Of a stretch of 64,000 bases of DNA, positions 3,233 to 58,243 are shown piece by piece. The notes below the pieces were generated by a model. It had not been told where the DNA came from. It ran no database searches and worked only from the letters and a program-made list of their open reading frames with translations. Positions within the stretch are counted from its first letter, which is position 1. Each line of letters begins with the position of its first letter. The stretch is from NCBI GenBank assembly GCA_004431415.1, contig QPMI01000107.1, forward strand, positions 1-64,000, in the 5' to 3' direction. The translations under genes were made by a program, and so were the position numbers. This DNA is from Cyanophora paradoxa CCMP329 (taxonomy: Eukaryota; Plantae; Glaucophyta).

Positions 3233-3248
3233 GGTTCGCTCGCTTTAC

Positions 3249-12205: not shown

Positions 12206-12700
12206 ATGGCGCGAACACGCGAGTCCGACGTGCTGTACAACAACGGCGACCTGGACGGGGAGATTCGACAGCGGAACGTGGACTTGGAGGATGCGAACGC
12301 AGTGCTGGAGGGAGGCGCACGTCCTCAGGGGCGGCTCGCCGGCGGAGAACTTCATGGAGCGCGTGCTCTACCTTGTGCGCTGGATTAGAGACGAATTCCA
12401 CGACGAGCGAGAGCTCCCGGACAGGGAGATGATCAGGGCCGCGGGCTTGATGGGTATGACAGAGAACCGAGATCGTACCTGAGGCGCGAACGCAGGGATC
12501 TGAACGGCGATTGGGCCGACCTGCAAGCGCTGTGGACGGCCTTTGCGAACCGCAAGAGCCAGATCCTTGCCCTGCCCGCGCAGGTACAGCAGCGTATCAT
12601 TGATTTCGTAGCCCCTGGCGCGACGAGTCCCTCCAGCAGCCATTCATGCAACCACGCTTCCTCTCCGGGCTCAGGAGCGCGTTCTTCCACTTGGCCGTGA
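12206..12700 (+). CDS. Frameshifted paralogue of the preceding ORF
   Basis: MARTRESDVLYNNG...; DLQALWTAFANRKSQILALPAQVQQRIIDFV aligns with ELRKLWWAFGSRKSPMTYLPQDVQRVILDLF; end uncertain. Confidence 0.55.
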
Positions 12701-17074: not shown

Positions 17075-17182
17075 ATTCATATATATGTATATACACAAAA
17101 TATTTAATTCTAATATATATATGCATATATACGTATATATATTAAGTTATATATGCATATATGCATATATACTAATTAAGTT
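17075..17182. repeat. AT-rich TATATG/TATA low-complexity tract upstream of the giant gene
   Basis: Direct inspection. Confidence 0.7.
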
Positions 17183-17515
17183 ACCCTCACGTACACTCAA
17201 CCCGTCCCTCCATATACATGTGTCCGGTCCGCAATCCTCGATTGGCGTCGACGTCGGTACCAGTGCGGGACGGACGGCTTGTAAAGGCTACTAGGCTACT
17301 CAGGGTACGGTCGCGGACAGAGGTTCGCGACGCGACCTGCCAGGTCCAGCGGAGCAGCCAGCCGCCTCCAGGCACAGCTTCCAGTTCGCTGGAGCAGTGC
17401 AGGAGGTCGCCCTCGCGTTCTCCCGGCGGCTGTGCGCGGCAGATCGGAAGTTCTGGAGGTCAGCGTTCTGGAAGCTCAGTCGCGGCCCAGGCCTTCGCAG
17501 CCTGGGAGCGCACCC

Positions 17516-20500
17516 ATGGAAGGCGCCAGTAGGGGGGGAGGGCGCCGCAGGAGCCCAGCGCGAATCAGAACTCGCAGCATTCACACGGCATGCGTGCTCC
17601 TCGTACTTTTCGCGGTCGTATCGGCCCAGACTACCAGCGAGAGCAATCGCGCGACCAACCTCGTTTTCGTGGACCTGGATGCAGCCTCTGACTTCGCTAA
17701 GCTCGTCCCGTCCGCGCCTTACTGTCCCACTCTGAAAGGTGAGAGCGTCAACCCCTTTCAGCAAATCGGCACGAACATCTCGCCTGTTGCCTCTCTGAGT
17801 GCTGATTGCGCCTGTCCGCTTTCGCAGTTGACTCCTGGGCTGGCCGAAATGGCACCATTGCCGGATCGGTCTCGGTCTCAGGCACGACCGCGCCGCCATC
17901 GTTCGCTCTCGGTCCGCCGCAGTCGCTTATGCGCATCGTGTGCCAGTAGCAACAGCTCATTTTGATGTTCTTTGCAGCGACCGTGGAGTACCAGGTCGAT
18001 TTCGGCGTCCAGGAGTCGTACAACACCTACTACGGCAGTTGGTGGAACAGGTCAGCGCGCACATTTCGTGCATCATCGTCTCTGGTTTGATCGACCGACG
18101 GCTCTAACATCCTACGGTCCAGGCCGTCGGACGCGCAGCCGTCCGTGTCTGTTGCTGACGGCTCGTGGTCTGTGTCCGTGAACGATGGTGCGCTTCTTTT
18201 CAATGAAGCCCTTAGCTGGACGTTGCATCTAAGCGGATCGCTTGGCCGCGCAGCCGACCTCGTCAACCTGTACCTGGTGCCGTCGAGCGCATCGGTACCG
18301 CTGACGCAGGGCAACCGGTGCGCCCCGCAGGGCGACGCCGGGCTCCACATGCTTAGCGGTCTGTGATGCCGCAGGTATCTGCCGGACGCGCTGGAGTCGC
18401 TCGCTGTCTCGCGGTCGGTGCTCGCACTGGGCCCCACCACGCGGCAGCTGCAATGGTCATGACCCCGCGCTCCTGCTTGTGCGCCTGGGGCTGATGCTTG
18501 CTCTCTGCGCAGGTCCGGCAAGGTCTGGGCGAAGAAGGTGGCCAAGTTCACGCAGCTTGACCCTGGTGCGTCCGCTTCTGTTCCGCACGCCCCGCGCGCA
18601 TGAGCTCACGAGCCCTCGCAGGTGCCAACTTCTGGTCCAACCGCGACGAGGACGTCTGGGTCGACGACCAGGGCAAGCTGCACCTGACGCTCAAGCGGGC
18701 GACGCAGACCACCGACGACGGCTTCCTCCAGGGCCGTTGGTACAGCACAGGTGCGCAGCTCGCGCGGGCGGGCAGCCGTGAAAGGCTGGACTCACGCGTG
18801 GCTCGCAGAGGTTGTGCTCCAGGACATCATGGGCTACGGTGCGCTTCACAGCCTTCAGTATCATGGGGCTTGCTGATCCGCCGCAGGCACGTACATCTGG
18901 TACCTCGACGCCCCCGTGCCTTGGGTTGACCCGTACGCTGTGCTTGGTATCTTCTTCTGGGTGCGGTGCTGTGCTCGCCGCTGTTGCGCGCCGTCGTCTT
19001 GTGCGATCGCTGACGTTTTGTCCCGCCTCGTTCGCGACACCTGCAGGAGGAAGAGGCGGTGCGTCTGCCGCCGCTGTCTCGCATTGTCCGTCCTGCTTGC
19101 GTATCCTCACTCCGCTCGCGCTATCAGACCGGCATCTCCCCCTGGCGGCACCGTGAAATCGCGTTCGAGTTCAGCCAGTTCGGAGTGGGCGCCGACCCGA
19201 CGAACTTCCAGTTCGGCTCAGCCTACGACCCGGTCCGCGCTGGCGGCCATCTGCAGCTCGCGTCACTCGCGTCTCGCTCACTTACCCTGGGCCGCAGAAT
19301 CCGGCGATCGGCCGGCCGGAGAACGCGACGATTCGCGTCAACATCAATGACTTGAAGCAGGCGAAGAACGTTCCGGCGAGCCAGACCAAGTACACCCTGC
19401 ACTGTACGCGCTGCTCTCTCGTATCCCTCAATCTACAGAGAACCAATTTCACGCTTTTCAGTGACCTGGACGTCCGGCCGTGCTGTCTTCCGCGTCTATC
19501 CGGACTGGTCTGCGCTTGTCCATGACTGCGTCAGACGTACAGATTGTGAACTTGCATTCGGCAGGATCTGCAAGTCGAAGCTCATGACGAAGGTGGAGCG
19601 CGATGCGCAGACGCTTCTTGCGGAGGAGGTCATCGAGTACCCGGTCCGTCATCACGATTCATAAGCCTCGCTGTGGAATGTCGGAGTGACCTCCCTGCGC
19701 CGCAGAACATCCCTACGCCTGGCCGCCAGCGCGTCCGGATGAACATGTGGAAATTCCGTGCGCTCTGTGGACGAAGCTGCTATTGGCATACTGATGTTGC
19801 CTCGCAGCCGACACAACGGGCGGAGACCGCCAGCCCCAGGACCGGACTTACGAGGGTAAGCGCTATTCATCCTCTGTAAATCGCCCTTCTTCTTACACCG
19901 CCTTCTGCAGCGATTTTTGGTGGTTTCGACTACGTGCCAGGCTCGCTGCTCCGCTTCCCCCTGTTCTGCGACTGAATTCCAATTCTAATGGTTCTTTTGC
20001 AGGCGGACCGGTTCCTACCAGCGCGCAGATGCCGGACTGTACGACTGTCAAGGTCGCGTTCGACCAGGTGCCCGTTACATTCGTCTGTAGCTGCGCTCAA
20101 GCTCATAGCTTTTGTGCAGCGCATCGCGCTACCCCGCTCGAAGTCGCTGGTCTCCTTCTCGCCGTCTTTCGTCGGCTCCAACGCGGACCCTGCGGATCTC
20201 GCGAGCACAGACTGCTCGATGCTCGATGCCGCCTCGCTCGCCCTTGTCGGTGGCGCCGGTTCGTCTTGATGTATGTGTGCGTGTTCGCCTCGCGTGTCGC
20301 TTAGCGATGGCGCCAGATGCGAAGTGCACGATCACGGGCCCGAGCGAGATCACGATCCAGCTGGGCGCGTCCGCGACCGTCATGCCCGGCGCGAGCATCA
20401 ACCTGCGGCCCAACACCGTCGCGACTTCGACGGTGACCTGCGGCGACGCGGAGCCCCTCGTCACCTGGAGGGCCGTCGTGCCGTCGGAGCTGTCCAGCTG

Positions 20501-23500
20501 CTCGTCCACGACTTCGACAGGTCTCTCTGCATCGTGGAACCCCGGCGCTACCATCGGCGTCACCCAGCCGACCGGCTCCGACAAGCTCGACACCGTGCTG
20601 GACGCTCGTTTTAAGGCCCCCACGGCCATGCACCCTTGCAACAACCTCATGCTTGACGCCTCCACGACTGGCGGCACTTGCGGTCGGCGCGTCATTTACA
20701 AGTGGGGCTTCGGTGCGCCTCTTGTGCGATGCTTCCTTCACCGATCCTGATCCTGAACCGCCTTCGCAGAAACGCTCGCGCCGAACAACATCTCCGTCGA
20801 TGCGATTCGCGCCATCGTGGAGTCGGCGAACAGCACCATCGTCCAGATCCCCAAGGAGCTGTTCGACCCTGGCCAGACGTACACTTTCAGCCTGACCGTC
20901 ACGAACGCGTTTGGTCTGTCGTCGACCACCAAGCAGTCCACTGCCGTGTTCCCGATCGACGTTCCCATCGCCATCATCTACGGCGCTCGCGACTTCTTCC
21001 CTCGAAGCGAGAGCCTGCACCTTGACACTGATCTTATTCCCGCGTACTGCCTTGGAATCACTCTGGGCCAGCTCCCGCCACTCGGCTTTGACGTGAGTCC
21101 TTTGAAACTTGAGTCTTCTTCTTTGTTAGCCTCAACCTTGTGCGCAGTGGGCCGTGCGCGCTCTGAGCCCCCCAGGGCCCGAGCTCGCCATACCCGACGC
21201 GTCCTTCGACTCGTCGCGGCGCCAGCTTATCATCCCGGTCAAGGCGCTCACTCCCGGCACGCTGTACGGATTCACCTTCCGCGCATATCAGATCGAGAAG
21301 CCTACCGTGTACGGCGAGGCCTTCGCAATGGCTTTCGCCAAGTACTCACCGCTCATCGTCGATATTCCGGAGACGGACCGCACTGTGACTCAGCAGGTTC
21401 CTGAGAGGCTCACGTGCCAGGCGACTGATCCCGATGCGGGCTCCACGGGCACCTGGCAACCCGCGCCGGCTGAGCAGCGCCGTCGCCTAGCCAACCTTAT
21501 CGACGACTTCACGACGCGCACCAACCGCCGCCGCGCCCTCCTGGGTGACGAGCACGTGGTTGTCAAGCCGACGGTCGATGAGATCTCGTGTATCTCCGGC
21601 GGCACGGACGGCACTTGCGTCATCTACTTCGGTGAGCGCTCTCCGACTCTTGCCCAGATGTCCCTCGAATATCCCCGCAGGCTACGATAACCCGTCCACG
21701 AGGACGGTCGTGCAGCATGTGGTGACTGAGCCCGGCACCGCACCGACGTACAACACGCTGTACCTGCCTTTCGGCGTGTCGAACGTGTCGATTCCCCACG
21801 AGTTCATTCCCGGCCGCCAGTACAAGGTGTTCTACATCACTGTCCCGTGTGTCCCTTGCACGCAGACATACGCGTGGGCGCTCAAGACGAGCTCTGCGGA
21901 CTCCGCCATCACCGCTTCCGCCAACCCGTGCTTCCCGCCGACGGACAGCGCCCCAACGTTCGATACCACCAGCAAGAAGTGCACGGTCATCAAGCCGGAC
22001 ACGGCAGTCGTGCAGACGTCTGATGCGAGCTACGAGTGGTACTGCGAGGACCTGTCTGCCGCCGGAACTCCGTGTTCCGAGTTCATCGAAGCGTTTTCTG
22101 GCGGAATTCCCACAGGCGACACGCTCAACTTCATGTTCCGGCCGGGGTTCAACTTCCCCTTCAAGTTCACCTGCAACGGTTACGTTGGGAACAAGGCCGG
22201 CAAGGACTACGTGACGCTCACTTCAGTCGCTGGTAACGGTCCGACGGTCCTGGTTTATGGCGTCTTCGATGAGTACGGCAAGCCGTTCCCGAAGATCCAG
22301 GACGGCGATCGCTACATCCCGATCGTCCCGTGGAACCGCCCCCTCATGTTCCAGACCAAGGTGACGTCGAACGTCCCCGTCGGTACTGATCCGACGGTGA
22401 CGTACGAATGGTCGCTGCCGCCCTCGGACATCGCTCTCGAGTACGGCAAGACGATTTCGACGACGAGCCGCTACAACGTGCCGACTCTCATTGTCATGAA
22501 GAACGTCGTAACTCCGGGCGCCATCTACCGCGCGACGGTCACCGCTCAGGATGCCCTCAACAATGTCGCGTCTGGTTACGTCGAGTTCAAAGTCGGCACG
22601 CCGCCGCTCACGCGGTCGCCCATTGGCGGCTTGATTGTCACTCCGACGAATGGCACGGCCATGGGATCCGGCCCCGAGACTACGCTGTTCCGCCTGACCG
22701 CGCTGGACTGGTACTCGCCGTTCGGGCCCGTGGACTTCAAGTTCTACTACATTCCTCCCCGCCAGCAGCAGAACAATACTATTTGGCTGTTTGAGGATAT
22801 CGTGAACGGCACCGTCCGCAATGACACCGATGGGCGCGAGGAGCTCATCAGCGGGTGGAACCCCTCGAACACTCGCGGCAACGTCCTGCTCCCCGCTGGA
22901 GTCCTGCCGTACTACTACATCACGTATGCGATGCTCGATTGATGACTGTCGATCTTGCGCTTACTGCGATGCAGTTGTGTGGTCTACGTGCGTGACATCT
23001 ACGGAACGGAAGTCCGCGCGTTCACCCGCGCGAGCGTGCTCCCTCCGCGGTTGACGGTACGCAACTGCTAAGAACGTTGATGTTGACCAGAGGGTTGAGT
23101 TCACTTCAGATTTGGTCGATCACGAACCGCACTGTTGGCTGGGCGGCGGACATGATCAACATCGGTGATCCTGGCGCAGGCCTGAACTCCATTCTCGCCG
23201 GCGCGCATCTGATCAACTGGGGCGCGAACGGAACTGCGGCCACGTGCTCGGTGTCGCTCCCTGCGCTGGTCAGTTCCTGGAGTGACGACGATCCGGCCAA
23301 CCCCACGGACGAGGCCGAGTACATGTACATGAAGGGGCACTACATCGTACGCAACGACTGTCTTTTACTTTCCTTCTGCCCGTGAGAACCTTATTACACC
23401 TTTCCATCTTAGGTTCAGAACGAGGGCCGCACGGCCATCAGGGGCTCGCTCACGGTCACCTGCCAACAGGTGTCCACGTTCGCCAGCATCGCTGAAACAG

Positions 23501-26500
23501 GCAACCCACTCGAGACGAGGATTCCCTACTCGAATCCTTATTCGAACGACGGTGGTTTGAACCAGCGCCTCCATCCGGATAACACCATCTACGATGACTC
23601 GTTCAACCTTACCGATGTCGGCTGGGCCATGCCCGTCGGGGGCTCCTCCAGCTTCGACTTGATCGTCCGTTGCCCGAAGGGCCAGCAAGCACGGTGCCTG
23701 CTGCCGGTTTGCAGCTGCCCGACCGGGGATCAGAATCTGGCGATGCCCGAGTCGCTTGACAAGCTGATGACTTTGGTACAACGATCTTATTCCGTTTACC
23801 GTGGCTATCATCTCTAACTTTGTGAAAATGCAGGCCGCAAATATCACCTACCAGCTCAGCCGCGGCTCGATTCCGGACGCCGAAGTCGAGAAGTGCATCA
23901 ACGTCATCAACGGGATCTTTGGCAACACGAACACGGACGCCATCATGACCGGAACCACTCGAACCGCCGCCGGCATCCTGTCTGAGCTCCTTCGTGTCAT
24001 GTTTGTTTGGGCCTGCTTTTCCATGGCTTTTCCCGCAGCTGACCGCCTGCCGGCAGCGAGGCGGGCCAGCTCCCGTACGACGTTACGTATGCGGCTGTTG
24101 AATCACTGAACCGAATGCTGTGGAACCAGAACCAGCCGAACGATGTCGCGTGCGTTTCGGTTTTGTGTGCTCACAATATCGATCTATCTCACGCACCCTT
24201 TGTTCACAGGACCGGCCGCCCCGACGCGCCTTCGGTCAAGCTGTCGAATATCACGATCTCGTCGATCTTCGTCACCGTCAACTATCCGTCATCCGTGAAC
24301 CCGAGCGACGTGATCATGACGATCGTGTACCGCAAAGGGCCTGAAGACGCGGAGCCGGTGCTGCTGGAGAGCCTACCGAACGGGCAGAACTCCTTTAACG
24401 ACGAGGGGCTTCACTACGGCACCGTCTACACTTACACGGCGACCTTCACCCTGTCGAACGCGATCACCAGCCAGTTCTCCGATCCGGTCTCTGGCCTCAC
24501 GCTCCTCCCCGTCGTGCCTACCCCGGTGATCACTGAAATCATCGATGTCACCGAGAACTGTGAGCCTCTCGCTCGCTTGAGATTTGCTTTTACGTTCTGA
24601 ACTCGTTTCTTCGCAGTCGTTCAGCTGGCGTTCACGGCGGAATGGACAACGAATGGCATCGATGTCGATTCCATCCAGGCGAATCACACGCAGTACCCCA
24701 TCTCCGTCCTTTCTGCGCCAACAAAGCGGAGGGCGAACCGCCGTATGCTGGCCGCCGGCGAGCTTGCATTCAACGTACCGAGGGTCAGGGTCACTGAGTT
24801 CGGCGCGCTCAACTTCAGCGACTTCGACCTCGCTCCGGGGTCTGTGTACGACTACAACATCATGGCCCACGCTGAGAGCGGGGCCTTCTCCGCGGGATCG
24901 CCGGAGTACCGCATCACCACGTGCCCGTCGCCTCCGTCCCTGGAAGTCATCTACGTGACCTTTAACTCTGTCAACGTCTCGGTCGTCGAGCCGCTGGATA
25001 GGTCCGCTCAGGTGGCCGTTCGGGCGTACCTGAGGCGCCGCTTCGAGCGCTCGGGAGACGACGTGACGCTGCTGGTGAAGGAGGACGTCACCCCGAAGCT
25101 CGATGTGACGCTGCCTTACTTGGACAAAGGAGTGCTCCCGGGGCGCGTGATCATCTACTCGGCGCGGTACGCAGTCCTCAACTACGAGAAGCTGTACTTT
25201 TCGCGCTGGACGGAGAACATCCCCGTCTACACTCCGCCGAGTCCCCCGGCGATTGAGGCGACGCCCGTGAACTCGACCTGCGTCAGCGTCACTGTCTCGT
25301 GCCCTGCTGACGCCACGGAGCAGTACATCCGCAACGTGACCATCTACCGTGATGGCACACCGATCGCCACCCTGCCCGCCTGCGACGGGAACACGGACCC
25401 AGTTACCATCGTCGACTGCGGTGTCATTCCGGGCGGCGACCACACGTACACCTCGACTTTCAACGGCGATCACGGCACGACCTCTGAATCATCCCAGGCT
25501 GCTCCCACGGAGCTCCCGCCATCGCCCCCGACTCTCGGCAAGGAGAACGTGAAGGACAAGAGCGCCGACATTAACATTTTCCTTCCTACCGACGGCAGCG
25601 CCACCGGGAACAACTCCGTGGTCGGGGCGTACCTGCTTCGCAACGGCGAGCCCGTCAATGATGTTTCGGGCGGCCCGTTGAACGAGGGCGGCTGGGTCGA
25701 AGGGCCCGGCGACTGGACGTACCCGGACTCGGCCCTCAGCCCCGGCACCGAGTACACGTACGAAGCGTACATCGTCCGCGAAAACGGCCTCAAGTCCGCG
25801 ACGTCTGAGCCGCTGACGTTCTGGACGCCCTGCTCCCCGCCGCAAGTGGAGGCGACGTCGCCGACCACGGATTGCATCACAGTAATCATCACGCTCCAGG
25901 ACCCCGTTTCCTCTGCGCTCGTGATCAACGTCACGAGGTCCACCGAGGGCGAGGCTCCCGTGGATGTCCGGTCGATCATCGTGCAGCCCAATGTCACCGT
26001 ATACTCGTTTGAGGACTGTGGCCTGAACGCGGGCCGCCCGTACAACTACACGGCTACCGTGGACGGCAAGGGCGACACGACCTCCGACCCTTCCAAGCCG
26101 GCCGAGGAATCGACCGTGCCCCCGCCGCCCATCCTTACTCTCGGCCCGGACCCGATCACCAAGGACAACGCAACTTTCACGATTTCCGTGCCCGATGGCA
26201 CCAATGCCGACGACATCAAGTCTTTCAACGTGTACTGCAACGATAAGAAAATCGCCAGCGTCACGCTTCCTGCGGATCAGTCGAGTGTCACGTTCACGCA
26301 CGATATCCACATCCCCGGCCATTTCTGCAAGTGCGTTGCATCGTTGATTGTCTGGCAGTCGTCCGGTCTCAACTCACACACCTCGCAGTTACTCGGCGGA
26401 AATCGTGTCAAAGTGGGATGAGGTTTCGAAGGAGTCCGAAGATCTCCCGTTGACAACCTCGCCTCTGGCGCCGTTTCCGGCTTGGGTCCCGTCGGGCGAG

Positions 26501-47500: not shown

Positions 47501-50500
47501 CCCAATGTCGCTGTGAGCGGCGTGCGGATCTGGCGGGCGACGGACGAGAACGACGCGTCGTCCTGGAGCGCGTGGGAGGTCGTCGCGACGGTCTCGAGTG
47601 CGGATGCCGACGGGGCGTACCGCTACGTGGATGGGGGACGCGCGTCGCAGACGAGGTACCGGTACAAGGCGGTGTTCCTCACGCCTGCGTACTCGAAGGA
47701 GAGCGATCCTCAGAACGCCCGCACCGGCCCGCCGGCGCCCGAGCTGACACTGAACTACGCGAAGGCCTACGAGGTGAAGCTCAACGTCACCCAGAGCGGC
47801 CTCAAGACCTCTTTCGTCGCCCAGACGCTGATCTGGCGCAACGATACGCGAATCTGCACCACGGGGCCCGACGCGCTCGACTCGTGCCTTGACAACAGCG
47901 CCGCCGATGTCAGCCCCGGCATCACGTACAAGTATGTGGCACAGTACAGAGGCGTGGCCTTCTACGGCGGGGCGCCTGACGACCAGAAGTTCGGGGAATT
48001 CTCGGCTCCGCTCTACGTGACGACGCCGCTGGTTGTGAAGCCGAGCATCACGCACGAGAAGATCACCGCGACGACCGCGGAGGTCTGCGTGACGTACCCG
48101 GCAGACGACAGCCGCTTCGAGATCAAGACGACGGAGTTCTCCCGCCTGTACCTTCCGGAGGCCGAAGTGAACACGTTCTCGATCACGAGGACAGCCGCGG
48201 CCAAGGACTGCAAGACGCTCACGGGCCTGGAGCCGGCGACGACGTCGAACATCACGGCTCACTACACGACGACGGGCGTGAACTCAACGACCTCGGACGT
48301 CCTGCAGGTGACGCAGGCCATTCCTGCCTCCCCCGTCCTCGCGCTGGACTCGGTCAACTCCTCTCCGAGCTTCCCCACCGCGACCGTCGTGAAGGTCAAG
48401 GTCACCTATCCAACCCGTGCGCCCGAGGCGAACACGATCCCTGGAGAGGACCTCAGGCCCGTCGTCACGAGGATCGACCTGTACCGCGATGGAATGCTGG
48501 CCGCCTCTCAGACGATGGCTGCACCGCGCACCGTCGACTTCTTCGTGTTCACGGACTCCGGTCTCCCGCCAGGACTGACTTTCGCCTACGAGGCGGCCCT
48601 CTTCACGCTCTACTCCAAGTCGCCGAACGGATCGCTGTCTGCCAAGACGAAGGACCCCGCGGCGCCAACCCTCGCTGCGAAGGGCATTGATGCCACGTCC
48701 GTGAAGGTGACGGTGGCGAAGCCCGTGCCGGAGCAGGATGCTGCGGTCGCAATCCGCATCTACACCGCAGCCTCGGAGGAGGGCCCCTACAGCAAGCTCA
48801 CCGAGATTCTCAAGACGTCGACGACCTACGAGTACACTCACAGTGGCCTGGCGGCAGGCTCGGAGTACTGGTACAAGGCGGACTACACCACGGCCGGCAA
48901 GCCGAGTCAGACATCAGGCGTGGACTCGCCGAACAGTACTGCCGACAGTGCCTGGACCTCGCCGAACCCGCCAGTCCTGTCGCTCACCTCGTCCACCACC
49001 GCGTCCTCCGGCGACGCGTCGACGAGCATCCTGCACGTTGAGCCGTCGACTCCGGATGACGACATTACCGTGCTCGTGCTCGAGCGTTTCCGCGGAGGCT
49101 TCCTCTGCAAGGTGAACAGCTCCTGGGCTGGTGACACTCCGGGCGTGACCGACTGCACCGACGACGACGCGTCCCCTGCAACGCCGTACACGTACGTGGC
49201 GTACTACATCGGCAAGGACGGCATGGAGAGCACTCGCGTGAACATCACGATCACGACGCCGCCGGGATCGCCGACGGTGGTGCAGGGCCCGTACCCAGCC
49301 ACCACCACGACCACGAGCGTCCAGATTGAGCTCCCTCAGAGGTGGGTGGAGAGCAACGGCACGGAGCTGTACCGCGACGGCCAGCTGATCGCAACGCTGC
49401 CGAACACGTGCACGCCCTGCAGCGCGCCGACCGGATGCTGCCTGCTGTTCAACGACACCGGTCTCGTCACGGGCCGCGCGTACAACTACACTGCCTTGCT
49501 CACGGTTGACAACGACGGCGTGGTCGTGAAGTCGCCGCTGTCTGATCCGAAGGAGCTCTGGACCGCCCTTCCCGCGCCCCAGCCTGTTGTGGTCTCGACC
49601 ACGACGGGCCCGTCGGTCACCGTGAGCGTGCCTCTTCCAGCCGGTCTGGAGGGGGTGGTCACGAGCACGGTCTGCTGGGAGGATACCACGCCGGGCACGA
49701 CGTTCACGGTCTCGAACGGCCAGTTCACTTTCACGAGCTCGAGCGCGCCGTACACGGTCGACTTTGCGCTGTCGTACGTCTGGGTGTGCGAGTTCAAGGG
49801 CAAGGGAGGCACGACCAGCCAGACGGGCCAGGTGGATCCGACGCTGCCGCCGGCGGCGCCCAACCTCGAGATGACCCCGCTGAACTCGACGACCATCATG
49901 GTTACAGTCACCATCGACAATGACGCCAGCAAGGCGTTGACGAACTCGACGATCCTCGTGTGCAACGGCACTGCTGGCACGCAGACGATTGCGCCCAGCC
50001 CGTCCGGCGTGACCGTCGTCTACCTGACCGTGCTGCCCGGCGAGGTCATCTCCTGCAACGCAGTCCTCGACTCGCCGGCCGGCAAGTCGGACAAGTCCGA
50101 CAGCGACTCCAGCAACGGCCAGGAGGGCGATCCGGTGGTGGTCCAGACGCAGTACCCGCCCAAGCCCACTGTGACTTGGAAGCGTGACCCCACAACGAAC
50201 CAGTCGGTCTGCGTCAACGTCTACGTCCCCGCGACCGAGGGCATCACGATTGGGAACGTGTACTTGTACCTCGTCCAGTCGGATGGCACCCTGTCCGCGT
50301 CCGCGGTGTTCTCCGGAGCGTGGGGCTCGGGCGACACGCAGAAATGTCCGGGCGGCCTGAACTCGTTCACGAACTACAACTACACTGCGCGGTACGACAC
50401 GCAAGGCGCGCCGTCCGTGCTTGCCGACCTCACGAGGACGTGGACGCGCCCGTCCCCGCCGATCGGCACGAACGGGACGCGGGGCGCCCAGTGGCTCCAG

Positions 50501-53500
50501 TTCGTCTTCACGGACATGGACGCCTCAGGGAACGGCGCTGCCCTCCGCGTGCTCAAGGAGCAGAGCGACACCGACGCAGCCCTGTTGGCCACGTACCAGT
50601 GGGAGTACCCCGACGTGGACGTGCGCACCCACAACCAGACCAGCCTGCAGCCCGGCGACACGAGGACGTACTTCGCGCGAATCGTGCAGCAGCTTCCGGA
50701 CGGCCTCGGCGACCTCAGGAGCGACTTCTCCAACCCCGTGACCATGACCACGCTCGTGCCCGGGGCGCCGTTCCTGAGGAACACGTCGATGGACCTCGAC
50801 AGGGTGTCCATCCAGGTCACGCTTGCGCAGGACGGCACCGAGTCGGCAGTCACGGAGGTGCTGTTGCAGCGCGACTTCGGTGTGAAGGAGCTGTCGTGCG
50901 TGAAGGATGAGCCGGCTAGCATCCCGCAGACCTACACGTGCCCGACGGATACGGGGCTCAACGCGAGTCAGACGTACACCTACCGGGCGAAGGCCATCAC
51001 GCTCGGCGAGGATTCGGAGTGGTCCTCGAACCTTGTCGTGACGCTTGGCCGCCCGAACCCGCCGGCGCTCTTCTTCACCGAGCCGGCGATGACGACCCTC
51101 GCGACGCTGACCTCGGTCACCCTGATGATCTCGCCGCCGTACACGCCGCCTGGAGTGATTACCGGCTTCGTCGTCTACCTCGTCACCGATGCCGGGCCCG
51201 TCGAGGTGCACCGGAACAGCTCGGTCTCGTTGACGTTCACGCACGCGGACCGCCTGCCGGGCACCGCGTACAACTACACCGCCAAGGTCCTCACGCTTCT
51301 CTCGGAGTCCGACATGTCGCCCCTCACGCTCGCGTGGACCAAGACGGCCCCCAAGCCCACGTGCACGTACGTCAACTCGACGTCCACGACGGTGAAGCTC
51401 GCGCTCCAGATCCCCGCGGTGGCCACCACCCTCGCGGACAAGCTCCGTCTTTTCCGGAGCGACCTCCTCTTGGACGGCGCTATTTCGAAGGACGGAGCCA
51501 TCGCGCCGAGCTCCTTGGAGAGAATCGTGACCGGCCTCAACGCGAGCTCGTCGTACGTGTTCTCGGTGGACTACACGACCACTGGCGCGCTTTCGTTCCG
51601 CTCGGATCCGTGCGAGGCGGACACGTCCCCGCCGAAGCCGATCATCACCCCTGTGTTGGTGACGCCAATCGGGATTTCCGTCCACATCAGCCTGCAGTCC
51701 GGCGTCGTTGACAACCGAATTACGCACACTCGCCTGATGAGGGATGGCGTGCTCGTGACGACCCTCCAAGGACTTCCTCCGGTCGTTGACGCGAACCGCT
51801 TCTCGGATGCGGGCGTCGCCTACAGGTACACGGCGATCTTTGTGGTTGCGCCGAACGATGTGGTCACCGCGGTCGGCGACGAGTCGGCTCCGGTCGAAAT
51901 CGTGGTCCCGGTTGCCACGCCCGTCGTGCTCAAGGTCAGGGAGCCGACGACGACGGCAATCGAGATCAAGGTGTGGTACTCGGAGCAGGACGTGGCCCTG
52001 GGCTACAACGCCCAGACCATTACCGGCGCGACCATTTACCGGGACAACGTGGTCGTGCGCCAGGCCGACGCAACGAGCGCGCTTCAGGCCTGGACCGACA
52101 CGGCTGTGCGCCCGAGCACATGGTACGCGTACACGGCCAAGTTCAACACGAGCGGCAATCCTTCCAACGTCTCGGCGGAGCTCTCCCTGCGCACTCCGGA
52201 CCTGCCGTTCCCGCCGTCGGGCACTTCAAACGCGGCTGTCTTGTCTCCGTCCTGGACCAAGATCAAGCTCGACGCTGCGGCCGCAATCGCGGCAGGGGCG
52301 CCGAATGTGGCCGGCGTCTACGTGACCGACAGCTCCGGCAACTGGGTGGCGAATCTGACAAGCGGGTCTCCGACGATCGTCCTCAGCTCATACGCCGGTA
52401 ACTCGATCCAGCCGGACGTTGCGTCGTACAGCTTCACATTCGCGTACGTCATGGCGTACGACGACGGCTACGTCTCGACCTCGACTGTGACCTACACCGT
52501 CAGCACGTGGCCTCGGCCGACTTGCTCCGTGACGGCTTCAAGCATCACGCCGGTCAAGATGACTCTGACCGCGAATACCAAGAGCAAGGGCACCGGATGG
52601 GAGCTCTACATCAAATCCGGCGCTTCCTTCACTGGGGTTAGCACCAAGCCCGACAGCACCGGGCTGTTCCCAGAGGAGACGTACGAGTACCATGTCACTG
52701 TAACTGGCGGACCCGATCAGGAGACCACGAGCCCGGCCTCGAACAGCTGCTTCGGGACCACGACGCGGCTCAACGCCCCGGGTATCAACGCGACCGCCGG
52801 AACGGGTTCGTACGAGAACCAGGACGACATCACTGTGACCACGACCTATCCCACGGATACCGGCCTCAAGGCGGTCATCGCCAGCACGCTTGTCTTCCGC
52901 GACAACTGCAACACGACCGTCTGCGCCGAGTCGGCATTCAACACGTCGAGTTACTCGTCGTGCGTGTCGAGCAGGGGCTGCACGACCACTCAGGTCAAGA
53001 ACATCGCGAAGTCGAGCGCGGCGGAAGAGTCCTTCGTCGACACGAACGTCCCGCGGCCGTCCTCGTACAACTACAAGTGCGCGGCTCGCTTTTGCCTTGC
53101 TTCTCAATCGTGCCCTAACCTCTTTCCGCGCAGGGCCTTCTTCGTCTCGACGAACTCGAAGGACTCGTTCATGTCGAGCGCCTCGCGCGTCGACGTGCTG
53201 GCCACTCCGACGCCCTCGCCGTCCCCGAGCCCGAGCCCCACGCCGTCGCCGTCCAAGATTCCTATTCCGGACTACGACGATGACAAGAACGATCAGCCCG
53301 ATGGCAGCGGAGACATCTGCGACATTCTGTACAACATTGTCCGGAGCGTCGTCCAGGTCTGGCTCGGTGTGGATTTATGTGCTGTTTTCAGAGTCACTGA
53401 TGTACACATTCGCAGAGCTCGTGCACAACTGAGATGGCCGCATTGTCCGGGAAGAGCGGCGTCACGTGGCTCACGCCGAACATTCAGATCAATCGTGCGT

Positions 53501-56500
53501 TCATGGGCAAATACTTTTGTCGGCACTCGCACTCATTATATCCCTGCAGTCACGTTTACCACGCCGGCGAAGCTTCAGCAGCAGGGCCTGCAGCGCACCG
53601 GCAACCTGACTTGCAGCATCGGTCCGTGAATTCTGGTTTGATTGATTGCTTTGCCTCTCTGAGCTTGCAAATCTGCAGACCCGAGCTACAACTTCACGGC
53701 CAACGGCATCAATCAGGATGCCCCGCTGTGCCAAGCCGAGTACAAGATAACAGACTGCTCAGGTGCGGGCAGCGCAGGAGGCCAACCCATCTCGGACATC
53801 GGATTCTTCAACACCAGTGCGTTCTTTGCTTGTATGCTCTCTCAGTGGCGAGTCTTCTCATTGCTCGCGCAGGCGGAGCTGAAGTCACGTTCGGGAAGAT
53901 GAACATGACTTGCTCGGGAATGCCGGGCCCGCTGGGCATGGTCTACGATGGCATCGAGCCGCAGCCGATCGTCAGCTTCAACTCGACGCTATCGGACTGG
54001 GGTTCGAAGACGATAGCCGTCACCATCAAGCCTTCGTGGATCCCGTCCTGGAGCAAGATCATGAACACTTACGTTGAACGCTGGCGTTGCTCCGACCCGT
54101 CCAAGACGACAGAATACACATTCTTCTCCTTCGAAGGAAATCAAACGAGCTTAATAGATACCGTTCCTGATAATGTTGGTGTATACTACTGCTACCAGTG
54201 CGTTCCCACATCGTCCTCTCCACATGTTTTCGACTGATGATCCTCGCGCAGGTCCTGGTACTTCGTCAACATCACGGATCGCTTCACCGGTTACGACTGG
54301 CTCGACATCGGCGCCCTGAACTCGAGCTTCTTCTACCGCAACGCGAGCAAGTCGGCGGAAAACCGCTACAGGCTCGCTCCGTACACGTGCTCTATGAAGC
54401 TCGAGAGCGTGTGGATGAACACGACGTACCGCCGCTTGAAGTTCGCGCTGTCGTACGAGCCCGCTACCTCGTTGAGGAACATCAAGGGCATCATCATCAA
54501 GCGGATGCGTTGCCCCTTTGATTCAGCGAAGGACGGCATACTCCCCAAGGTCACCCCGTGTACCGAGGGAGAAGCTAGCATTGAAGGATGCGGCGTCGGG
54601 CGCTGCTTCTCACCGATCCGGAAGACGTGCTTCAATAACGCCACGCGGTCTTGCGGGAGCTGGACCTCGCCAAGTCAGTCAGCAGCCGACTTCACACTGT
54701 ACAGAGGTGGCAAGGTTGATGGTCTGCGCACCGATCCACTCCCGTCCGTCTACGAAGTTGAAGGATATGACGACGAACTTCCATCCCTAGACGTCATTCA
54801 CTGGCGGTGCATTCTTGTGGCATTCGTCTGTGTTATCTGGTCACTGATGTTTGTCCACAGCTCTGCCTGCCTGCTGTACACGGACCGGACCGATACCGCG
54901 AGTAGCTTGACCGACGAGCCACAGGACGCTCGTTACGACGCCGATGACACGGGCTGTCGCCTGGGAGGCACGGACGATCCTTACGGGCCTTGCGGGCCTG
55001 ACCCCCGGACGACCACTGTCACGCCGCTTCGGACGTACAGCCTTATTCGCAAGCTCACGAACATCAAGCGCCACGAGTTACGAGTCCTGCTTCCCAACAG
55101 CTACAAGAGTCTCGGCAGGGACGGGGCTATCCTGGGCGTGCAGGTGTACCGCACGGACTGCAAGACTTATAATTGTAGATTCGTGTCAGATGGCCGGGTC
55201 GGTTTCTCTTGTGACAACAATAACCTCAACTGCGGTGCTTATTACCGAACAATGGACGAGTGTCTAAAAAAGGACACAGATTGTGGTGTTGAAACATACG
55301 ACACACTTGTCAAACTCGCCAACATTGCATCACGCCATCCGCACGAATGGGGTCAGTTCAAGCGTATTCCGAACTCATATGGGCTCTATGAACCAGACTA
55401 CAATGTATACAATTCGACCTACCAACCAGAGCCGTACACCATGGATATGTTCGATCCTGCCATCATCACGCCTCCGAACTGGATGTTGCTTCGAGCCGGT
55501 ACGTCAGGTCAAGATCCATGGAATTTGGGGAATGCTCTTGGTACATCGTATACGTTTTACTACCGGTGCATTTCCTCCCTCTGCTCAGCCGTCACATATC
55601 CTGATTAGAATTGTTGCGCAGCACCCACTTCGTCTTCAAGGATGGCGAAGGGCGTAGATTTGACGGCTCCAGCGATTGGGTGAGCTGTGACCTCACCGGT
55701 TCTGGAAACGAGTTCAAGCAGTGCCCTGGTTTCGATAATCGCTTCTTCGGCGTTGCTGGCACAAATGTCCCATGTCGGGTGGATATGCCTGCTACAGGGG
55801 ACATTGTAACCACGAGCACCACGATAACGGCCAAATACAAAGTCACGAATTACGGGTCGTTCCCGGTCCCGTACGTGTCCTACGTCCAGTGCAACTTCTC
55901 TGGCACCCCGTACGAGCTCTACAGGACAGCCCCGTACAGCCACGTGGTAAATAACAAAGTGTTTCCTTGGGCCACGGATGTAACGATAGATCCAAGGCGA
56001 AACAACAGCTTCTTTGACGCACTCACGGCCAACGTCGGCAATTATACCATCTACACGAGAGCGCCATTTTCCGATACAGCGACCTGGCACTCCATGCGCC
56101 TTGACACGCTCTTCACGTCTCCAAATTATTCCAGTGTTGTGCATGGCAATAGGATTGCGGGTCTCTGGGATGTTGGTGCGATTACAGATAAGACTTCTAT
56201 GTGGAAAATGGCCAGTACTGATGCGCACGCAGGTGGCAACAGCGGAGGAGCCCTCCTTGCAGATGACGGAGGTACCGGATTCTTCAAGATCAGGGTCCAA
56301 TGTCCTAACCCATCATCATCGTCTCCTTGCGATGCAAGATCCCTGCCCACATGCTACTGCTTGAACGGTGAGGTTGTTGCTGCATGTTCCTGGGTAGCAT
56401 CTCACTTTTCGACAGGATGGCCGAAAATGGGCGGCTTGAAGAGCGCAGGGGCCACGCCGATATCCGCATCGGCCACGAAGCGCCGCGCGATTCTCGGGTC

Positions 56501-58243
56501 CGAGGCGGACGTAGAGTACCGCGCTCATCGCCAGTTGTCGTCGCGCCGTCTCAGGGCAATCAAGCCGTCGCTCCCGGCTGCCGTCGAGCCTCAAGGAGCG
56601 CTGTCAACGGCCCAGCTGCCGTCCGCAGTCCAGCCGCAGCTGAGCCTGCCCCGTCGGCGCATGTTGAGTGCCAGCAGCGTCTCCGTGAAGCGCGTGCTGT
56701 GGCCGGGCGCGCAGCTGCCGACGGCGGTGATGGTGAACGGCGGCACGATCGTGTACACGTCGTCGAGCAGCGACGGGCAGTTCATGCTCCGCTCGATCAC
56801 GTACCAGATCACCGGCATCGACCGCACGGAGGTCGCCGAGAAGCAGCCGGTCCCCCTCGTCTGCTGGTCCGTTTCTGTGCTCGATTAGTGGTCCTTGAAT
56901 GCAGTTGTTGACCGTGATGTTGCAGGCAACAAGACAAGAACGTCGTGATCGACCCCGAGAGCCTGGCCACGAGCTACCAGCTCTCCGACGGGTACTCGAC
57001 GTCGAGCTCGTTCTTCCGCCTCGAATCTGTGAGCCGCCTTCAGTCGCTTCTACTCGTGCAGTTTTTCGGGTACTGATTTGGCGATCGCAGACGGGCCGCC
57101 GCATGCACGCGGGCAACGCGTACACGCGCGGCATGACGCTCACGATCAAGTGCCCGGCCGGCTCGAAGTGCCCGTCCCCTGTCTGCACGGCGCCGACCAG
57201 TGCGTCTTCCGCTGCAGTCGCTCCGCGCCGTGTGCCCAACTGACCCCCTCGCAGTCTCCGTGTGCGCGCGCTACGACAGCAGCGCCAAGGGCTTCTCGTC
57301 GGCCGGTTGCTCGTCGACGTACGAGTGCACGGGTCCCTCGTGCCAGACCATCCCCGGCTCGGACGGCCCCGTCGGCATCATCGACGAGGCGTACGTCTCG
57401 GGCCGCCAGTCGTTCGCGACCGGCACCATGAACTGGAACGACCTGGGCTGGAGCGTCACCTCCTGCACATGCGACTCGATAGACGTGCGCCCTGTTGCCC
57501 GCTCTTCTTCCGTTCGGGGCTGACAGTGCATGCGCCGCGCAGGTCGTCACGCTCATCCAGAGCGTGCCGCCCGCGATCCCGAAGGCGGCCCTCCCGGCGC
57601 CCAACCCCGTCCCCGCGGTTCCGCCGGCTACTGGCGGCGCGGACACCGCTCGCTCGAGCTCGTCCTCGAACATCGGCGTGATCGTCGGCGGTGTCATCGG
57701 CGGTGTCGCCCTCGTCGCCATCGCCGTCGTGGCGGTCTACGCCGCCCGCATTCACTATTCCCGCAAATGTGCGCGGGCGCCCTCTCTGTGCTCGTTGCAC
57801 CGCTTCCTTGTACTCACGCTCCTCCCGCAGCGGCGATCAAGTCGGTCACGAACCGCGGCGACCAGGTGTACGCGATCGGGTCGGACCGCGCCTCGCACGA
57901 GCTCGTCCACGTCTCGGAGGGCATGCCTGTCTCGCACCCGACTTCCGTGCGGGTCTCCAACGAGATCCGCCTCGCCACGCCGGCCCTCAGCGCCCAGCCG
58001 TCCTTCGCCGCCCCGGCGACGCCCGCGCCGGCGGTCGTCGCGACGGCGGAGGCCGTGAGCGAGGGCGACGTGATGCTCGCCATGCCCGCCGACGCCGAGG
58101 CCGACCAGGTGGGCACTGCCACGCAAGCTTGCCCGGTTTGCCGTCTAATCTCCCTGCGGCAGCTCTCCAACGTGTCGGAGCGCTCAGAGCGCTCGTCGGT
58201 GGCGCCAGCCGGCGTCGAGCAGGTCCCCATCATCACGCTCTAA
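17516..58243 (+). CDS. Giant multi-exon type I membrane protein: signal peptide, GH16-like, REJ, ~90 FN3-like repeats, GPS-like motif, TM, cytoplasmic tail
   Basis: ATG 17516 then ACVLLVLFAVVSA|Q signal; coding text continues across the short introns checked (e.g. 26331-26388, 53077-53133, 53357-53415, 57485-57542, 57768-57830); not every junction was verified; TM at 57672-57746; stop TAA at 58243. Confidence 0.8.
18512..19935 (+). other. GH16-like (beta-glucanase fold) domain of the giant protein
   Basis: Spliced text DPGANFWSNRDEDVWVDDQGKLHLTL..WYSTEVVLQDIMGYGTYIWYL..VLGIFFW..HREIAFEFSQFG..IPTPGRQRVRMNMW resembles bacterial GH16 proteins. Confidence 0.75.
20600..23020 (+). other. REJ (polycystin-1 / sperm receptor for egg jelly) domain
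   Basis: LMLDASTTGGTCGRRVIYKW; IPKELFDPGQTYTFSLTVTN; LIIPVKALTPGTLYGF; TPP..GGLIVTPTNGTAM..TLFRLTALDW..FYY. Confidence 0.75.
26389..53076 (+). other. Single 26,688-nt exon encoding the FN3 stalk
   Basis: Open frame flanked by the acceptor at 26388 and the donor GTGCGC at 53077; recurrent L.PGT.Y.Y...S.....T.P.PP FN3 pattern. Confidence 0.85.
29981..48318 (+). repeat. Intragenic 2778-bp (926-aa, nine-FN3) near-identical repeats plus a ~1.09-kb duplicate
   Basis: Unit starts at 29981, 32759, 35537 (partial), 43754 and 46532 (partial), with a partial copy at 41580-43753; second family 37108-38196 vs 39811-40902. Confidence 0.95.

What the first reader, a model, noticed from the sequence alone, without database searches (positions are those of the whole stretch)
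17516..58243. Titin-scale single-pass surface receptor: glucan-binding head and REJ on an ~90-FN3 stalk with a GPS-like base
Seen: one spliced gene of roughly 12-13 thousand codons with signal peptide, GH16-like, REJ, FN3 array, Cys-rich region, GPS-like C..Y.....F...GC...T.C.C, one TM and a short tail. Known: REJ plus GAIN/GPS characterise polycystin-1 family ectodomains, where they are adjacent and followed by 11 TMs. Here they are separated by ~9,600 aa and there is one TM. Inference: at ~3.5 nm per FN3 the stalk could project ~0.3 um, acting as a long-range glycan sensor, adhesin or mechanosensor. I do not recognise this architecture.
Basis: partly seen in the sequence, partly recalled or inferred. 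Interest (0 to 1): 0.8.

Follow-up and report, generated by a model that had tools for sequence, protein, structure and literature searches.

The report
Giant FN3-stalk surface protein, Cyanophora
This is one real gene of the alga Cyanophora paradoxa, wrongly split into three in the public annotation, that encodes a roughly 12,400-residue single-pass membrane protein whose sugar-enzyme-like head and REJ module sit on about 92 fibronectin-type domains. It may form a cell-surface or flagellar filament about 0.3 micrometres long.

Summary
The observation largely holds. Window 17516-58243 (+) is one gene of Cyanophora paradoxa. Its core is a single stop-free exon of 9,093 codons (26348-53626).

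**Annotation.** The public annotation tiles the locus with three models, g675, g676 and g677. Both boundaries fall inside that open frame and inside FN3 domains, so the split is an artefact. The composite protein is about 12,300-12,600 aa.

**Confirmed features:**
- a signal peptide;
- a REJ module (Pfam 37.2 bits against a cut-off of 25);
- about 91-94 FN3 domains, supported by profile matches to titin and RPTP FN3 domains and by an AF2 model (pLDDT 91) with an FN3 fold;
- a Cys-rich base of about 1,300 aa with no known family;
- exactly one TM helix and a tail of about 126 aa (P0001 4910-5035).

**New here.**
- The stalk is a nine-FN3 super-repeat kept in register for about 7.3 units. Its young copies are 95-98% identical, with dN/dS about 0.33.
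- A second giant locus exists, with a head 94% identical.

**Not confirmed.**
- GH16 fails Pfam, NCBIfam and PDB searches. The head is instead 35% identical to uncharacterised Flavobacteriia lipoproteins that carry EVDIEF, where Cyanophora has EIAFEF.
- GPS/GAIN fails Pfam, lacks the HL-T/S site, and the fold test was inconclusive.

**Precedents.** Single-pass REJ receptors already exist (suREJ1). The closest functional analogue is Chlamydomonas Mstax.

**Limits.** No RNA evidence could be obtained, and the function is inferred.

The parts
17516..17626 (+). Start codon and signal-peptide-like N-terminus (residues 1-37, ...CVLLVLFAVVSA|Q)
   Evidence: This is the first ATG of its frame. It is the same start as public model P0003 and is conserved in paralog P0018.
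18517..19756 (+). Beta-glucanase-like (GH16-style) head domain, spread over about 11 tiny exons (P0003 residues ~199-425). Its motif is EIAFEF.
   Evidence: ESM atlas score 0.97 to a 'beta-glucanase-like' cluster, with the GH16 set taking 17 of 30 hits. It is 35% identical (E 2e-21) to Flavobacteriia ORFs that carry EVDIEF. Pfam, NCBIfam and PDB sequence searches are negative.
20799..23050 (+). REJ module (P0003 residues ~662-1360)
   Evidence: Pfam PF02010 scores 37.2 bits (profile positions 223-416) and 23.5 bits (148-292) on the spliced model. Single exons score 27.5 and 17.9 bits.
24220..53089 (+). Array of about 91-94 FN3 domains, forming the stalk
   Evidence: The self-profile finds 84 + 6-7 domains, with about 3 more likely in gaps. 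Profile A1 matches titin, RPTP and fibronectin FN3 domains (E 1e-16). The AF2 model has pLDDT 91.4 and its Foldseek matches are all FN3.
26389..53076 (+). Giant exon, part of the stop-free frame 26348-53626
   Evidence: The acceptor at 26388/26389 is used by both P0003 and my DP model. The donor at 53077 comes from P0001. That 57-nt intron is in frame and may be optional.
29936..36156 (+). Young super-repeat block A: 2,778-bp unit of nine FN3 domains, about 2.2 copies
   Evidence: Self-blastn identity is 95-98%. Domain order is ABCDEFGHI. dN/dS is about 0.33.
41534..48318 (+). Young super-repeat block B, about 2.4 copies of the same nine-FN3 unit
53204..53254 (+). Thr/Ser/Pro-rich hinge (TPTPSPSPSPSPTPSPS) after the last FN3 domain
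   Evidence: Read directly from the sequence
53416..57198 (+). Cys-rich membrane-proximal region with no known family. It includes a predicted beta-sandwich encoded at ~56650-57198.
   Evidence: No Pfam or NCBIfam match. The only relative is Cyanophora paralog P0004. VIA alignment gives Z 9.4 to CBM2-type sandwiches, but on a low-confidence model.
57255..57484 (+). Juxtamembrane Cys-rich exon with GPS-reminiscent spacing: CARYDSSAKGFSSAGC at 57263-57310 and SCTCDSIDV at 57461-57487
   Evidence: The cysteines are conserved in P0004. There is no Pfam GPS or GAIN match. The atlas finds GPS clusters only at 0.86 and 0.83. HL-T/S is absent.
57672..57746 (+). Single transmembrane helix, IGVIVGGVIGGVALVAIAVVAVYAA, followed by RIHYSRK
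   Evidence: This is the only stretch above the hydropathy threshold in the whole protein, apart from a translated intron.
57747..58243 (+). Cytoplasmic tail of about 126 aa (P0001 4910-5035; two introns) plus the stop codon. It carries a short motif, AIG...[DE]LVH[VL][ST]E, shared with P0004.
   Evidence: P0001 mapping and my reading of the P0004 sequence

Best explanation
Window 17516-58243 is one gene of the glaucophyte Cyanophora paradoxa. It encodes a type I membrane glycoprotein of about 12,300-12,600 residues (my estimate: about 1.3 MDa before glycosylation).

Shown:
- a cleavable-looking signal peptide;
- an N-terminal domain of about 230 aa that is homologous to small bacterial beta-glucanase-like proteins, in which the GH16-style ExDxE motif has become ExAxE;
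- a REJ module;
- about 92 tandem FN3 domains, built mainly by repeated duplication of a nine-domain unit;
- a Ser/Pro hinge;
- a lineage-specific Cys-rich base of about 1,300 aa;
- one TM helix and a tail of about 126 aa (P0001 4910-5035).

Inferred:
- The FN3 array is a semi-rigid stalk of about 0.3 micrometres. It holds the carbohydrate-recognising head and REJ module far from the membrane.
- The molecule therefore acts as a long-reach adhesin or sensor filament of the cell or flagellar surface.
- It is anchored by the disulfide-rich base.
- It probably does not self-cleave, because the GPS catalytic triad is missing.
For: One gene:
- The frame stays open for 27 kb.
- Public models P0003, P0002 and P0001 tile the locus end to end. 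Their boundaries (about 27643-27842 and 41152-41387) lie inside that frame and inside FN3 domains.
- P0003 joins REJ to 10 FN3 domains, and P0001 joins FN3 domains to the TM helix.
- Paralog model P0018 joins the head, REJ and more than 30 FN3 domains.
- The introns share a tight consensus: 48-89 nt, GTGCG donor, CTGAY branch site, CGCAG acceptor.

Domains.

Selection: dN/dS is about 0.33 between repeat copies, and the head is about 97-100% conserved between the two loci.

Topology: there is one TM helix and 159 N-glycosylation sequons in the giant exon.

Precedents: suREJ1 is a single-pass REJ receptor that binds a sulfated fucan (PMC10855541). Mstax is an ~8,000-aa filament with a lectin head, a shaft and a membrane anchor (bioRxiv 10.1101/2024.12.24.630281).
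Against: - There is no transcript or peptide evidence.
- The GH16 and GPS calls fail the HMM tests.
- Glycan binding by the head is untested.
- The copy number of the 95-98% identical super-repeats depends on the long-read assembly.
- Some introns are uncertain: 55235-56079 versus 55566-55621, and the in-frame candidates 41361-41423 and 53077-53133.
Confidence: 0.7

Rival explanations
1. The protein is the shaft, or the whole filament, of one of the two kinds of Cyanophora flagellar hairs (mastigonemes). On this reading it is a functional analogue of Chlamydomonas Mstax, and the second giant locus makes the other kind. This is a location-specific version of the best explanation.
For: Cyanophora flagella carry two kinds of mastigonemes, one short and flat and one long and narrow (PMC6704402). 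There are two giant paralogous loci. Mstax has the same logic: a distal lectin head, a long repetitive shaft, a polycystin-related membrane anchor and about 8,000 aa. REJ is a module of the polycystin-1 family.
Against: There is no sequence similarity to Mstax or Mst1. The shaft chemistry differs (FN3 domains, not Hyp-rich repeats). There is one TM helix rather than a PKD2-like region. No localisation data exist. The two loci may be alleles or recent duplicates rather than two hair types.
Confidence: 0.15
2. It is a polycystin-1 or adhesion-GPCR-style mechanosensor. On this reading the juxtamembrane Cys-rich exon is a true, divergent GPS within a GAIN-like domain, and pulling on the stalk exposes or sheds a tethered element.
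For: The spacing C-x2-Y-x6-F-x3-GC ... T-S-C-T-C sits directly before the TM linker and is conserved in paralog P0004. ESM feature neighbours include three GPS-bearing clusters at 0.86, 0.83 and 0.77. REJ is present in the same protein.
Against: Pfam GPS and GAIN give no match even at E = 1. A PDB profile search is negative. HL-T/S is replaced by SI-D in this protein and GL-R in P0004. About 50 residues lie between the GC and the C-x-C, against about 10-22 in typical GPS motifs (from my own knowledge). The AF2 model (pLDDT 48.5) shows a CBM2-like sandwich, and no GAIN domain appears among the top matches.
Confidence: 0.1
3. The public annotation is right, and the locus gives three or more separate transcripts and proteins (g675, g676, g677).
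For: The BRAKER1/AUGUSTUS models were trained with RNA-seq (PMC6704402). I could not check any reads.
Against: Both boundaries fall within one stop-free frame and cut through FN3 domains. g676 would have neither a signal peptide nor a TM helix. The g676 and g677 starts are merely internal Met codons. The genome authors themselves state that the models need manual curation.
Confidence: 0.06
4. It is a shed or secreted extracellular-matrix or mucilage protein rather than a membrane-resident receptor. The TM form would only be a precursor that is clipped in the hinge or base.
For: There is a Ser/Pro hinge and a large Cys-rich base. Many giant surface proteins are shed.
Against: No recognised protease site or domain was found. 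The TM helix and a tail motif are conserved in P0004.
Confidence: 0.09

Closest known systems
[quoted passage not shown]
   Same: Both have carbohydrate-recognition modules at the N-terminus, a REJ module, one transmembrane segment and a short tail. suREJ1 binds a polysaccharide, the fucose sulfate polymer (PMC2120838, PMC10855541).
   Different: suREJ1 is about 1,450 aa (from my own knowledge), with C-type lectin and EGF modules. It has no FN3 stalk. Here the head is beta-glucanase-like, about 92 FN3 domains are inserted, and no GPS is detectable.
Polycystin-1 (PKD1) / PKDREJ family
   Same: Both contain a REJ module (Pfam PF02010 above its cut-off) in a very large modular ectodomain.
   Different: This protein has no 11-TM region, no detected PLAT, GAIN/GPS or PKD domains, and the REJ module is not next to the membrane.
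Chlamydomonas Mstax (axial protein of mastigonemes)
   Same: Both are giant proteins (about 8,000 aa versus about 12,400 aa) with the N-terminus at the distal end, lectin-type head domains, a long repetitive shaft of hundreds of nanometres, a membrane anchor and a cytosolic tail (bioRxiv 10.1101/2024.12.24.630281).
   Different: The Mstax shaft is made of glycosylated Hyp-rich repeats wrapped by Mst1, and its anchor is a PKD2-like multi-pass region. Here the shaft is made of FN3 domains and the anchor is a single helix. No sequence similarity was found.
Titin A-band FN3/Ig super-repeats
   Same: The FN3 domains here give their best PDB profile matches to titin FN3 domains. The array is organised in multi-domain super-repeats that are kept in register.
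   Different: Titin is intracellular, mixes Ig and FN3 domains, and has 7- and 11-domain units (from my own knowledge). This protein is extracellular, made only of FN3 domains, and has a nine-domain unit.
Bacterial fibrillar adhesins and the uncharacterised Flavobacteriia ~272-aa beta-glucanase-like lipoproteins (L001, L002)
   Same: The head domain is 35% identical over about 130 aa and alignable over the whole domain. The general stalk-plus-tip-adhesin design also matches.
   Different: The bacterial proteins are single-domain and keep EVDIE. The Cyanophora head has EIAFE and is fused to a eukaryotic stalk.

Membership tests
Fibronectin type III (PF00041) | Sequence profile matches known FN3 domains over the whole domain | tested here: met
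   Profile A1, built from 45 divergent repeats, matches titin, RPTP, fibronectin and FN3con over positions 3-92 of 94, with E down to 1e-16. Pfam fn3 scores 46-62 bits on a few copies.
Fibronectin type III (PF00041) | Seven-strand beta-sandwich fold | tested here: met
   The AF2 model has pLDDT 91.4. The top 50 Foldseek matches are all FN3 domains, with TM-scores of about 0.6-0.8.
REJ module (PF02010) | HMM score above Pfam's gathering cut-off of 25 bits | tested here: met
   37.2 bits (profile positions 223-416) plus 23.5 bits (148-292) on P0003. 27.5 bits on the single exon 21491-22939.
Polycystin-1 family | REJ directly followed by GAIN/GPS, then 11 TM helices with PLAT | tested here: not met
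   REJ is followed by about 92 FN3 domains. There is one TM helix only. No GAIN, GPS or PLAT match was found in Pfam.
GPS motif / GAIN domain (PF01825, PF16489) | HMM match | tested here: not met
   No family at E <= 1 on P0001:4560-5035 or on the exon 57137-57520. A PDB profile search is negative.
GPS motif / GAIN domain (PF01825, PF16489) | Autoproteolysis triad HL|T/S after C-x-C | tested here: not met
   The sequence is CTC-D-SI-D in this protein and CTC-A-GL-R in paralog P0004.
GPS motif / GAIN domain (PF01825, PF16489) | GAIN subdomain B fold | tested here: inconclusive
   The AF2 model has pLDDT 48.5. Foldseek gives no match at E <= 1e-3. The top VIA matches are CBM2-type sandwiches (Z 9.4), and no GAIN domain appears in the top 50. 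The atlas finds GPS clusters only at 0.77-0.86.
Glycoside hydrolase family 16 (PF00722) | HMM match | tested here: not met
   P0003:1-520 matches no Pfam family at E <= 0.1, no NCBIfam family at E <= 1, and nothing by PDB phmmer or profile search at E <= 10. The bacterial relatives also match no Pfam family.
Glycoside hydrolase family 16 (PF00722) | Catalytic E-x-D-x(0,1)-E motif | tested here: not met
   Cyanophora has E-I-A-F-E: both Glu are kept but the Asp is lost. The same is true in paralog P0018. The bacterial relatives have E-V-D-I-E.
Glycoside hydrolase family 16 (PF00722) | Concanavalin-A-like beta-jelly-roll fold | not tested
The only lead is the ESM atlas: 0.97 to a 'beta-glucanase-like' cluster, with the GH16 set taking 17 of 30 hits.
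suREJ1-type single-pass REJ receptors | Carbohydrate-recognition head, REJ and one TM helix | tested here: met
   The head type differs (not C-type lectin or EGF), and glycan binding is untested.
Mstax-type mastigoneme shaft | Hyp-rich MHR repeats and a PKD2-like TM region | tested here: not met
   The shaft is made of FN3 domains and there is a single TM helix. The resemblance is one of design only.

The most novel reading that the evidence does not exclude
The two giant paralogous genes encode the filaments of the two kinds of flagellar hairs of Cyanophora. Each hair would be a single FN3 chain of about 0.3 micrometres, with a distal glycan-binding head plus REJ and a non-cleaving, GPS-reminiscent juxtamembrane module. 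This would tie polycystin-type ectodomain modules to ciliary hairs in a second archaeplastid lineage. It would also suggest that the link between polycystins and ciliary surface filaments is ancient.
Probability: 0.12. Interest if true: 0.85.

Novelty: new variant of a known kind. Interest (0 to 1): 0.58.

Why it matters
If it is one product, it is among the largest proteins predicted in any alga. It is also a rare extracellular example of a titin-like, in-register FN3 super-repeat array.

It places a REJ module, known mainly from animal polycystin-1 and sperm receptors, at the tip of a 0.3-micrometre stalk in a glaucophyte. That gives a handle on the pre-metazoan history of polycystin-type ectodomains, and on the unknown molecular make-up of glaucophyte surface or flagellar filaments.

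There is also a practical consequence. The public Cyanophora proteome splits this gene, and its paralog, into pieces. That distorts orthology and domain-architecture surveys.

Tried and rejected
No reads could be laid, so no expression or splice evidence was obtained.
- The search for homologous proteins on the REJ exon alone found nothing, because of the length filter.
- Pfam scans of single exons of the head, of the Cys-rich base and of the GPS-like exon found nothing. The same was true on the spliced public models, and NCBIfam gave nothing meaningful.
- PDB sequence and profile searches with the head and with the base found nothing meaningful.
- The exhaustive representative search with the base found only one true relative, the Cyanophora paralog P0004. 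The other 13 hits covered only the Pro/Ala linker and the TM helix, and I discarded them.
- The AF2 model of the base, built from a two-sequence alignment, was of low confidence (pLDDT 48.5). Its fold matches are therefore only weak hints.
- My own splice-graph model, run from the ATG with strict intron thresholds, stalled at 18090. It needed relaxed thresholds. I rely on the public model P0003 for the head.
- The joined spliced protein of my own model was never sent to any search or fold tool. Spliced sequence was searched only through the public protein ids P0001 and P0003, and otherwise exon by exon by reference.
- Supplement and literature searches for these gene ids, or for FN3 or REJ in Cyanophora, gave nothing.
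- An assembly artefact as the source of the repeats was considered unlikely. The copies differ by 2-5%, have no indels over kilobases, and show dN/dS of about 0.33.

Full report
**What is there.** The window is GC-rich eukaryotic DNA. Frame 2 of the + strand is open for 9,093 codons, from 26348 to 53626. That cannot arise by chance. A word search with the unique C-terminal part of this frame returned a 5,035-aa protein, P0001, of EukProt set EP00741, Cyanophora paradoxa, named tig00000431_g677.t1. A second search returned P0002 (g676, 4,444 aa) and P0003 (g675, 2,707 aa). So the organism is the glaucophyte Cyanophora paradoxa, and the locus is already in a public proteome, but as three adjacent gene models.

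**One gene, not three.**
It runs through 33 short introns into the giant frame and stops matching at 27643.
- P0002 starts at an internal Met at 27842 and ends at about 41152-41351.
- P0001 starts at an internal Met at 41387 and ends at 58240, just before the stop at 58241-58243.
- Both boundaries lie inside the single stop-free frame and cut through FN3 domains.
- g676 would have neither a signal peptide nor a membrane anchor.
- The genome paper states that the BRAKER1/AUGUSTUS models of this intron-rich genome need manual curation. It reports a mean of 9.2 introns per gene and a mean intron length of 86 bp (PMC6704402).
- At a second locus (tig00000470), model P0018 (5,766 aa) is 94% identical to P0003 over the whole head. 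It continues into more than 30 FN3 domains in a single model.
- The introns share a tight consensus: 48-89 nt, donor GTGCG or GTGAG, branch site CTGAY, acceptor CGCAG.
- A splice-graph search of my own, trained on 17 introns (16 from P0001 plus my candidate 55566-55621), recovered nearly the same path from 17516. It joins the head to the giant exon through the same intron, 26331-26388.
- It also prefers a consensus 56-nt intron, 55566-55621, over P0001's odd 845-nt intron. That would restore 263 coding-looking residues. The paralog P0004 aligns across this junction, though with only modest support: score 56, against 33 +/- 5.5 for shuffled sequences.
- The composite length is 12,321 aa with the public introns, or about 12,584 aa with the alternative.
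- I did not send any joined model of my own to a search or fold tool. Spliced sequence was searched only through the public protein ids, and otherwise exon by exon by reference.

**Domains that hold.**
- *Signal peptide.* The N-terminus has a basic n-region, a hydrophobic core CVLLVLFAVVSA and a small-x-small site. It is conserved in the paralog, though it is its most diverged part.
- *REJ.* Pfam PF02010 scores 37.2 bits (profile positions 223-416) and 23.5 bits (148-292) on the spliced P0003, against a cut-off of 25. Even single exons score 27.5 and 17.9 bits.
- *FN3 count.* Pfam itself sees only a few copies. A self-profile iterated on the locus finds 84 domains in the giant exon and 6-7 in the exons just upstream. 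Three gaps of one or two domain lengths suggest more, giving about 91-94.
- *FN3 identity.* A profile of 45 mutually divergent copies (mean identity 18%) matches titin, RPTP, Robo and fibronectin FN3 domains end to end, with E down to 1e-16. The AF2 model of one copy has pLDDT 91.4, and its Foldseek matches are all FN3 domains.
- *Membrane topology.* Hydropathy finds one TM helix in the whole protein, at 57672-57746, followed by RIHYSRK and a tail of about 126 aa (P0001 4910-5035).
- *Glycosylation.* The giant exon carries 159 N-x-S/T sequons and is rich in Thr, Ser, Ala, Val and Pro.

**The stalk has a super-repeat.** Self-comparison shows a 2,778-bp unit of 926 aa, or nine FN3 domains. It occurs in two blocks, 29936-36156 and 41534-48318, at 95-98% identity without indels. 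I assigned every domain to its best match among the nine types a-i. The order abcdefghi is kept in register from ORF residue 1200 to about 7911, which is 66 domains or about 7.3 units. These comprise young copies, an older copy at 37-58% of self-score, and still older copies between the blocks whose weak best matches mostly follow the same order. Young copies differ with dN/dS of about 0.33. So they are distinct, translated sequences under purifying selection, not collapsed or duplicated assembly errors. The closest analogy is the super-repeat pattern of titin, but outside the cell.

**The head.** Pfam, NCBIfam and PDB sequence searches give nothing on P0003:1-520. Other evidence is still informative.
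- Language-model features of P0003:195-445 score 0.97 to a cluster auto-named beta-glucanase-like. GH16-bearing clusters make up 17 of the 30 hits.
- A scan of bacterial genomes found two Flavobacteriia ORFs of 272-273 aa with lipoprotein-like N-termini (L001:1351-2169, L002:1360-2175). They are 35% identical to the head (E 2e-21 pairwise) and align over the whole domain.
- These bacterial ORFs carry EVDIEF, where both Cyanophora loci have EIAFEF. This is the GH16-style E-x-D-x-E motif with both Glu kept and the Asp lost (the motif definition is from my own knowledge of the family).
- The bacterial proteins also match no Pfam or PDB entry.

So this is an un-named family that I can call GH16-like only by motif and by language-model neighbours. 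Its fold was not tested. Whether the head binds or cuts a glycan remains open.

**The base.** About 1,300 residues between the Ser/Pro hinge (53204-53254) and the TM helix match nothing in Pfam or NCBIfam. An exhaustive search of 1.84 billion representative proteins found one true relative, the Cyanophora protein P0004 (tig00021504_g21971, 37% identity). P0004 shares the Cys-rich part, the juxtamembrane exon, the TM helix and a short tail motif.

SCTCDSIDV, at 57263-57487) and is conserved in P0004. However:
- the Pfam GPS and GAIN models do not match;
- HL-T/S is replaced in both proteins;
- the gap between GC and CxC is about 50 residues;
- a PDB profile search is empty;
- ESM neighbours with GPS reach only 0.86.

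The AF2 model from the two-sequence alignment is poor (pLDDT 48.5). Its best matches are CBM2-type beta-sandwiches for the first 120 residues (Z 9.4). No GAIN domain appears among the top matches. I therefore treat GPS/GAIN as not supported but not excluded.

**How it most likely works.** The anatomy of a type I membrane glycoprotein is shown. The rest is inferred.
- At about 3.5 nm per FN3 domain, the stalk would reach about 0.3 micrometres.
- It would present the glycan-enzyme-like head and REJ module at its tip. The Cys-rich base and single helix would anchor it, and the conserved tail motif would offer a cytoplasmic contact.
- Without the GPS triad, self-cleavage is unlikely.

There are two precedents.
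- suREJ1 is a single-pass REJ receptor with lectin modules. It binds a fucose sulfate polymer (PMC2120838, PMC10855541).
- Chlamydomonas Mstax is an ~8,000-aa protein with distal lectin domains, a shaft of hundreds of nanometres and a polycystin-related membrane anchor. It forms the core of flagellar hairs (bioRxiv 10.1101/2024.12.24.630281).

Cyanophora flagella bear two kinds of hairs of unknown composition (PMC6704402), and there are two giant loci. A role as a flagellar-hair filament is therefore an attractive but untested special case.

**Limits.**
- There is no RNA or peptide evidence.
- The super-repeat copy number rests on the long-read assembly.
- Searches of this scan's earlier notes found no previous note on this gene.

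**Verdict.** This is a real, single, titin-scale surface protein gene with a new domain architecture. The REJ, FN3, single-TM and signal-peptide calls are confirmed. The GH16 call is weakened to homology with an un-named, GH16-like bacterial family. The GPS call is unsupported. It is a new variant of known kinds, namely single-pass REJ receptors and giant repetitive surface filaments. Interest is moderate to high, limited by the lack of expression and functional data.

Noticed in passing
window 16392-16890 and 18497-18995: A 499-nt inverted repeat, 97% complementary. The upstream arm is an inverted copy of the exons and introns that encode part of the beta-glucanase-like head. The public annotation calls it a separate 107-aa gene (g674, P0020). 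The loop of 1,606 nt holds the giant gene's start codon and first exons.
   Followed up: partly
tig00000470 (proteins P0018, P0019; not in the window): A second giant locus. Its head, REJ and first FN3 domains are 94% identical to P0003, and nearly 100% in the head domain, while the signal peptide and the FN3 array are more diverged. It could be a paralog or a divergent haplotype.
   Followed up: partly
L001:129-1346 (Flavobacteriia MAG contig JABXHW010000030.1): The bacterial relative of the head domain sits directly downstream of a 405-aa ORF, with 4 nt between them. That suggests an operon of two secreted or lipoprotein-like glycan-related proteins. Neither ORF was characterised.
   Followed up: no
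window 41361-41423 and 53077-53133: Two consensus-looking introns of 63 and 57 nt lie inside the giant open frame and are in frame. They could be optional (retained or spliced), giving isoforms that differ by 21 or 19 residues. Public model g677 starts inside the first of them.
   Followed up: no
window 17115-17183: An AT-rich microsatellite (ATATATGC-type, 8-32 nt periods) about 330 nt upstream of the start codon, in an otherwise GC-rich region of about 61% GC. It may be a promoter-region feature.
   Followed up: no
window 494-12208: Earlier first-stage notes flag a virus-like island here, with a UL9-like origin-binding helicase and palindromes, about 5 kb upstream of the giant gene. I did not examine it.
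   Followed up: no
P0001, P0002, P0003 (precomputed Pfam column): The database lists PF25833 for all three models, but the local Pfam copy did not report that family on the same sequences. I could not learn what PF25833 is.
   Followed up: no
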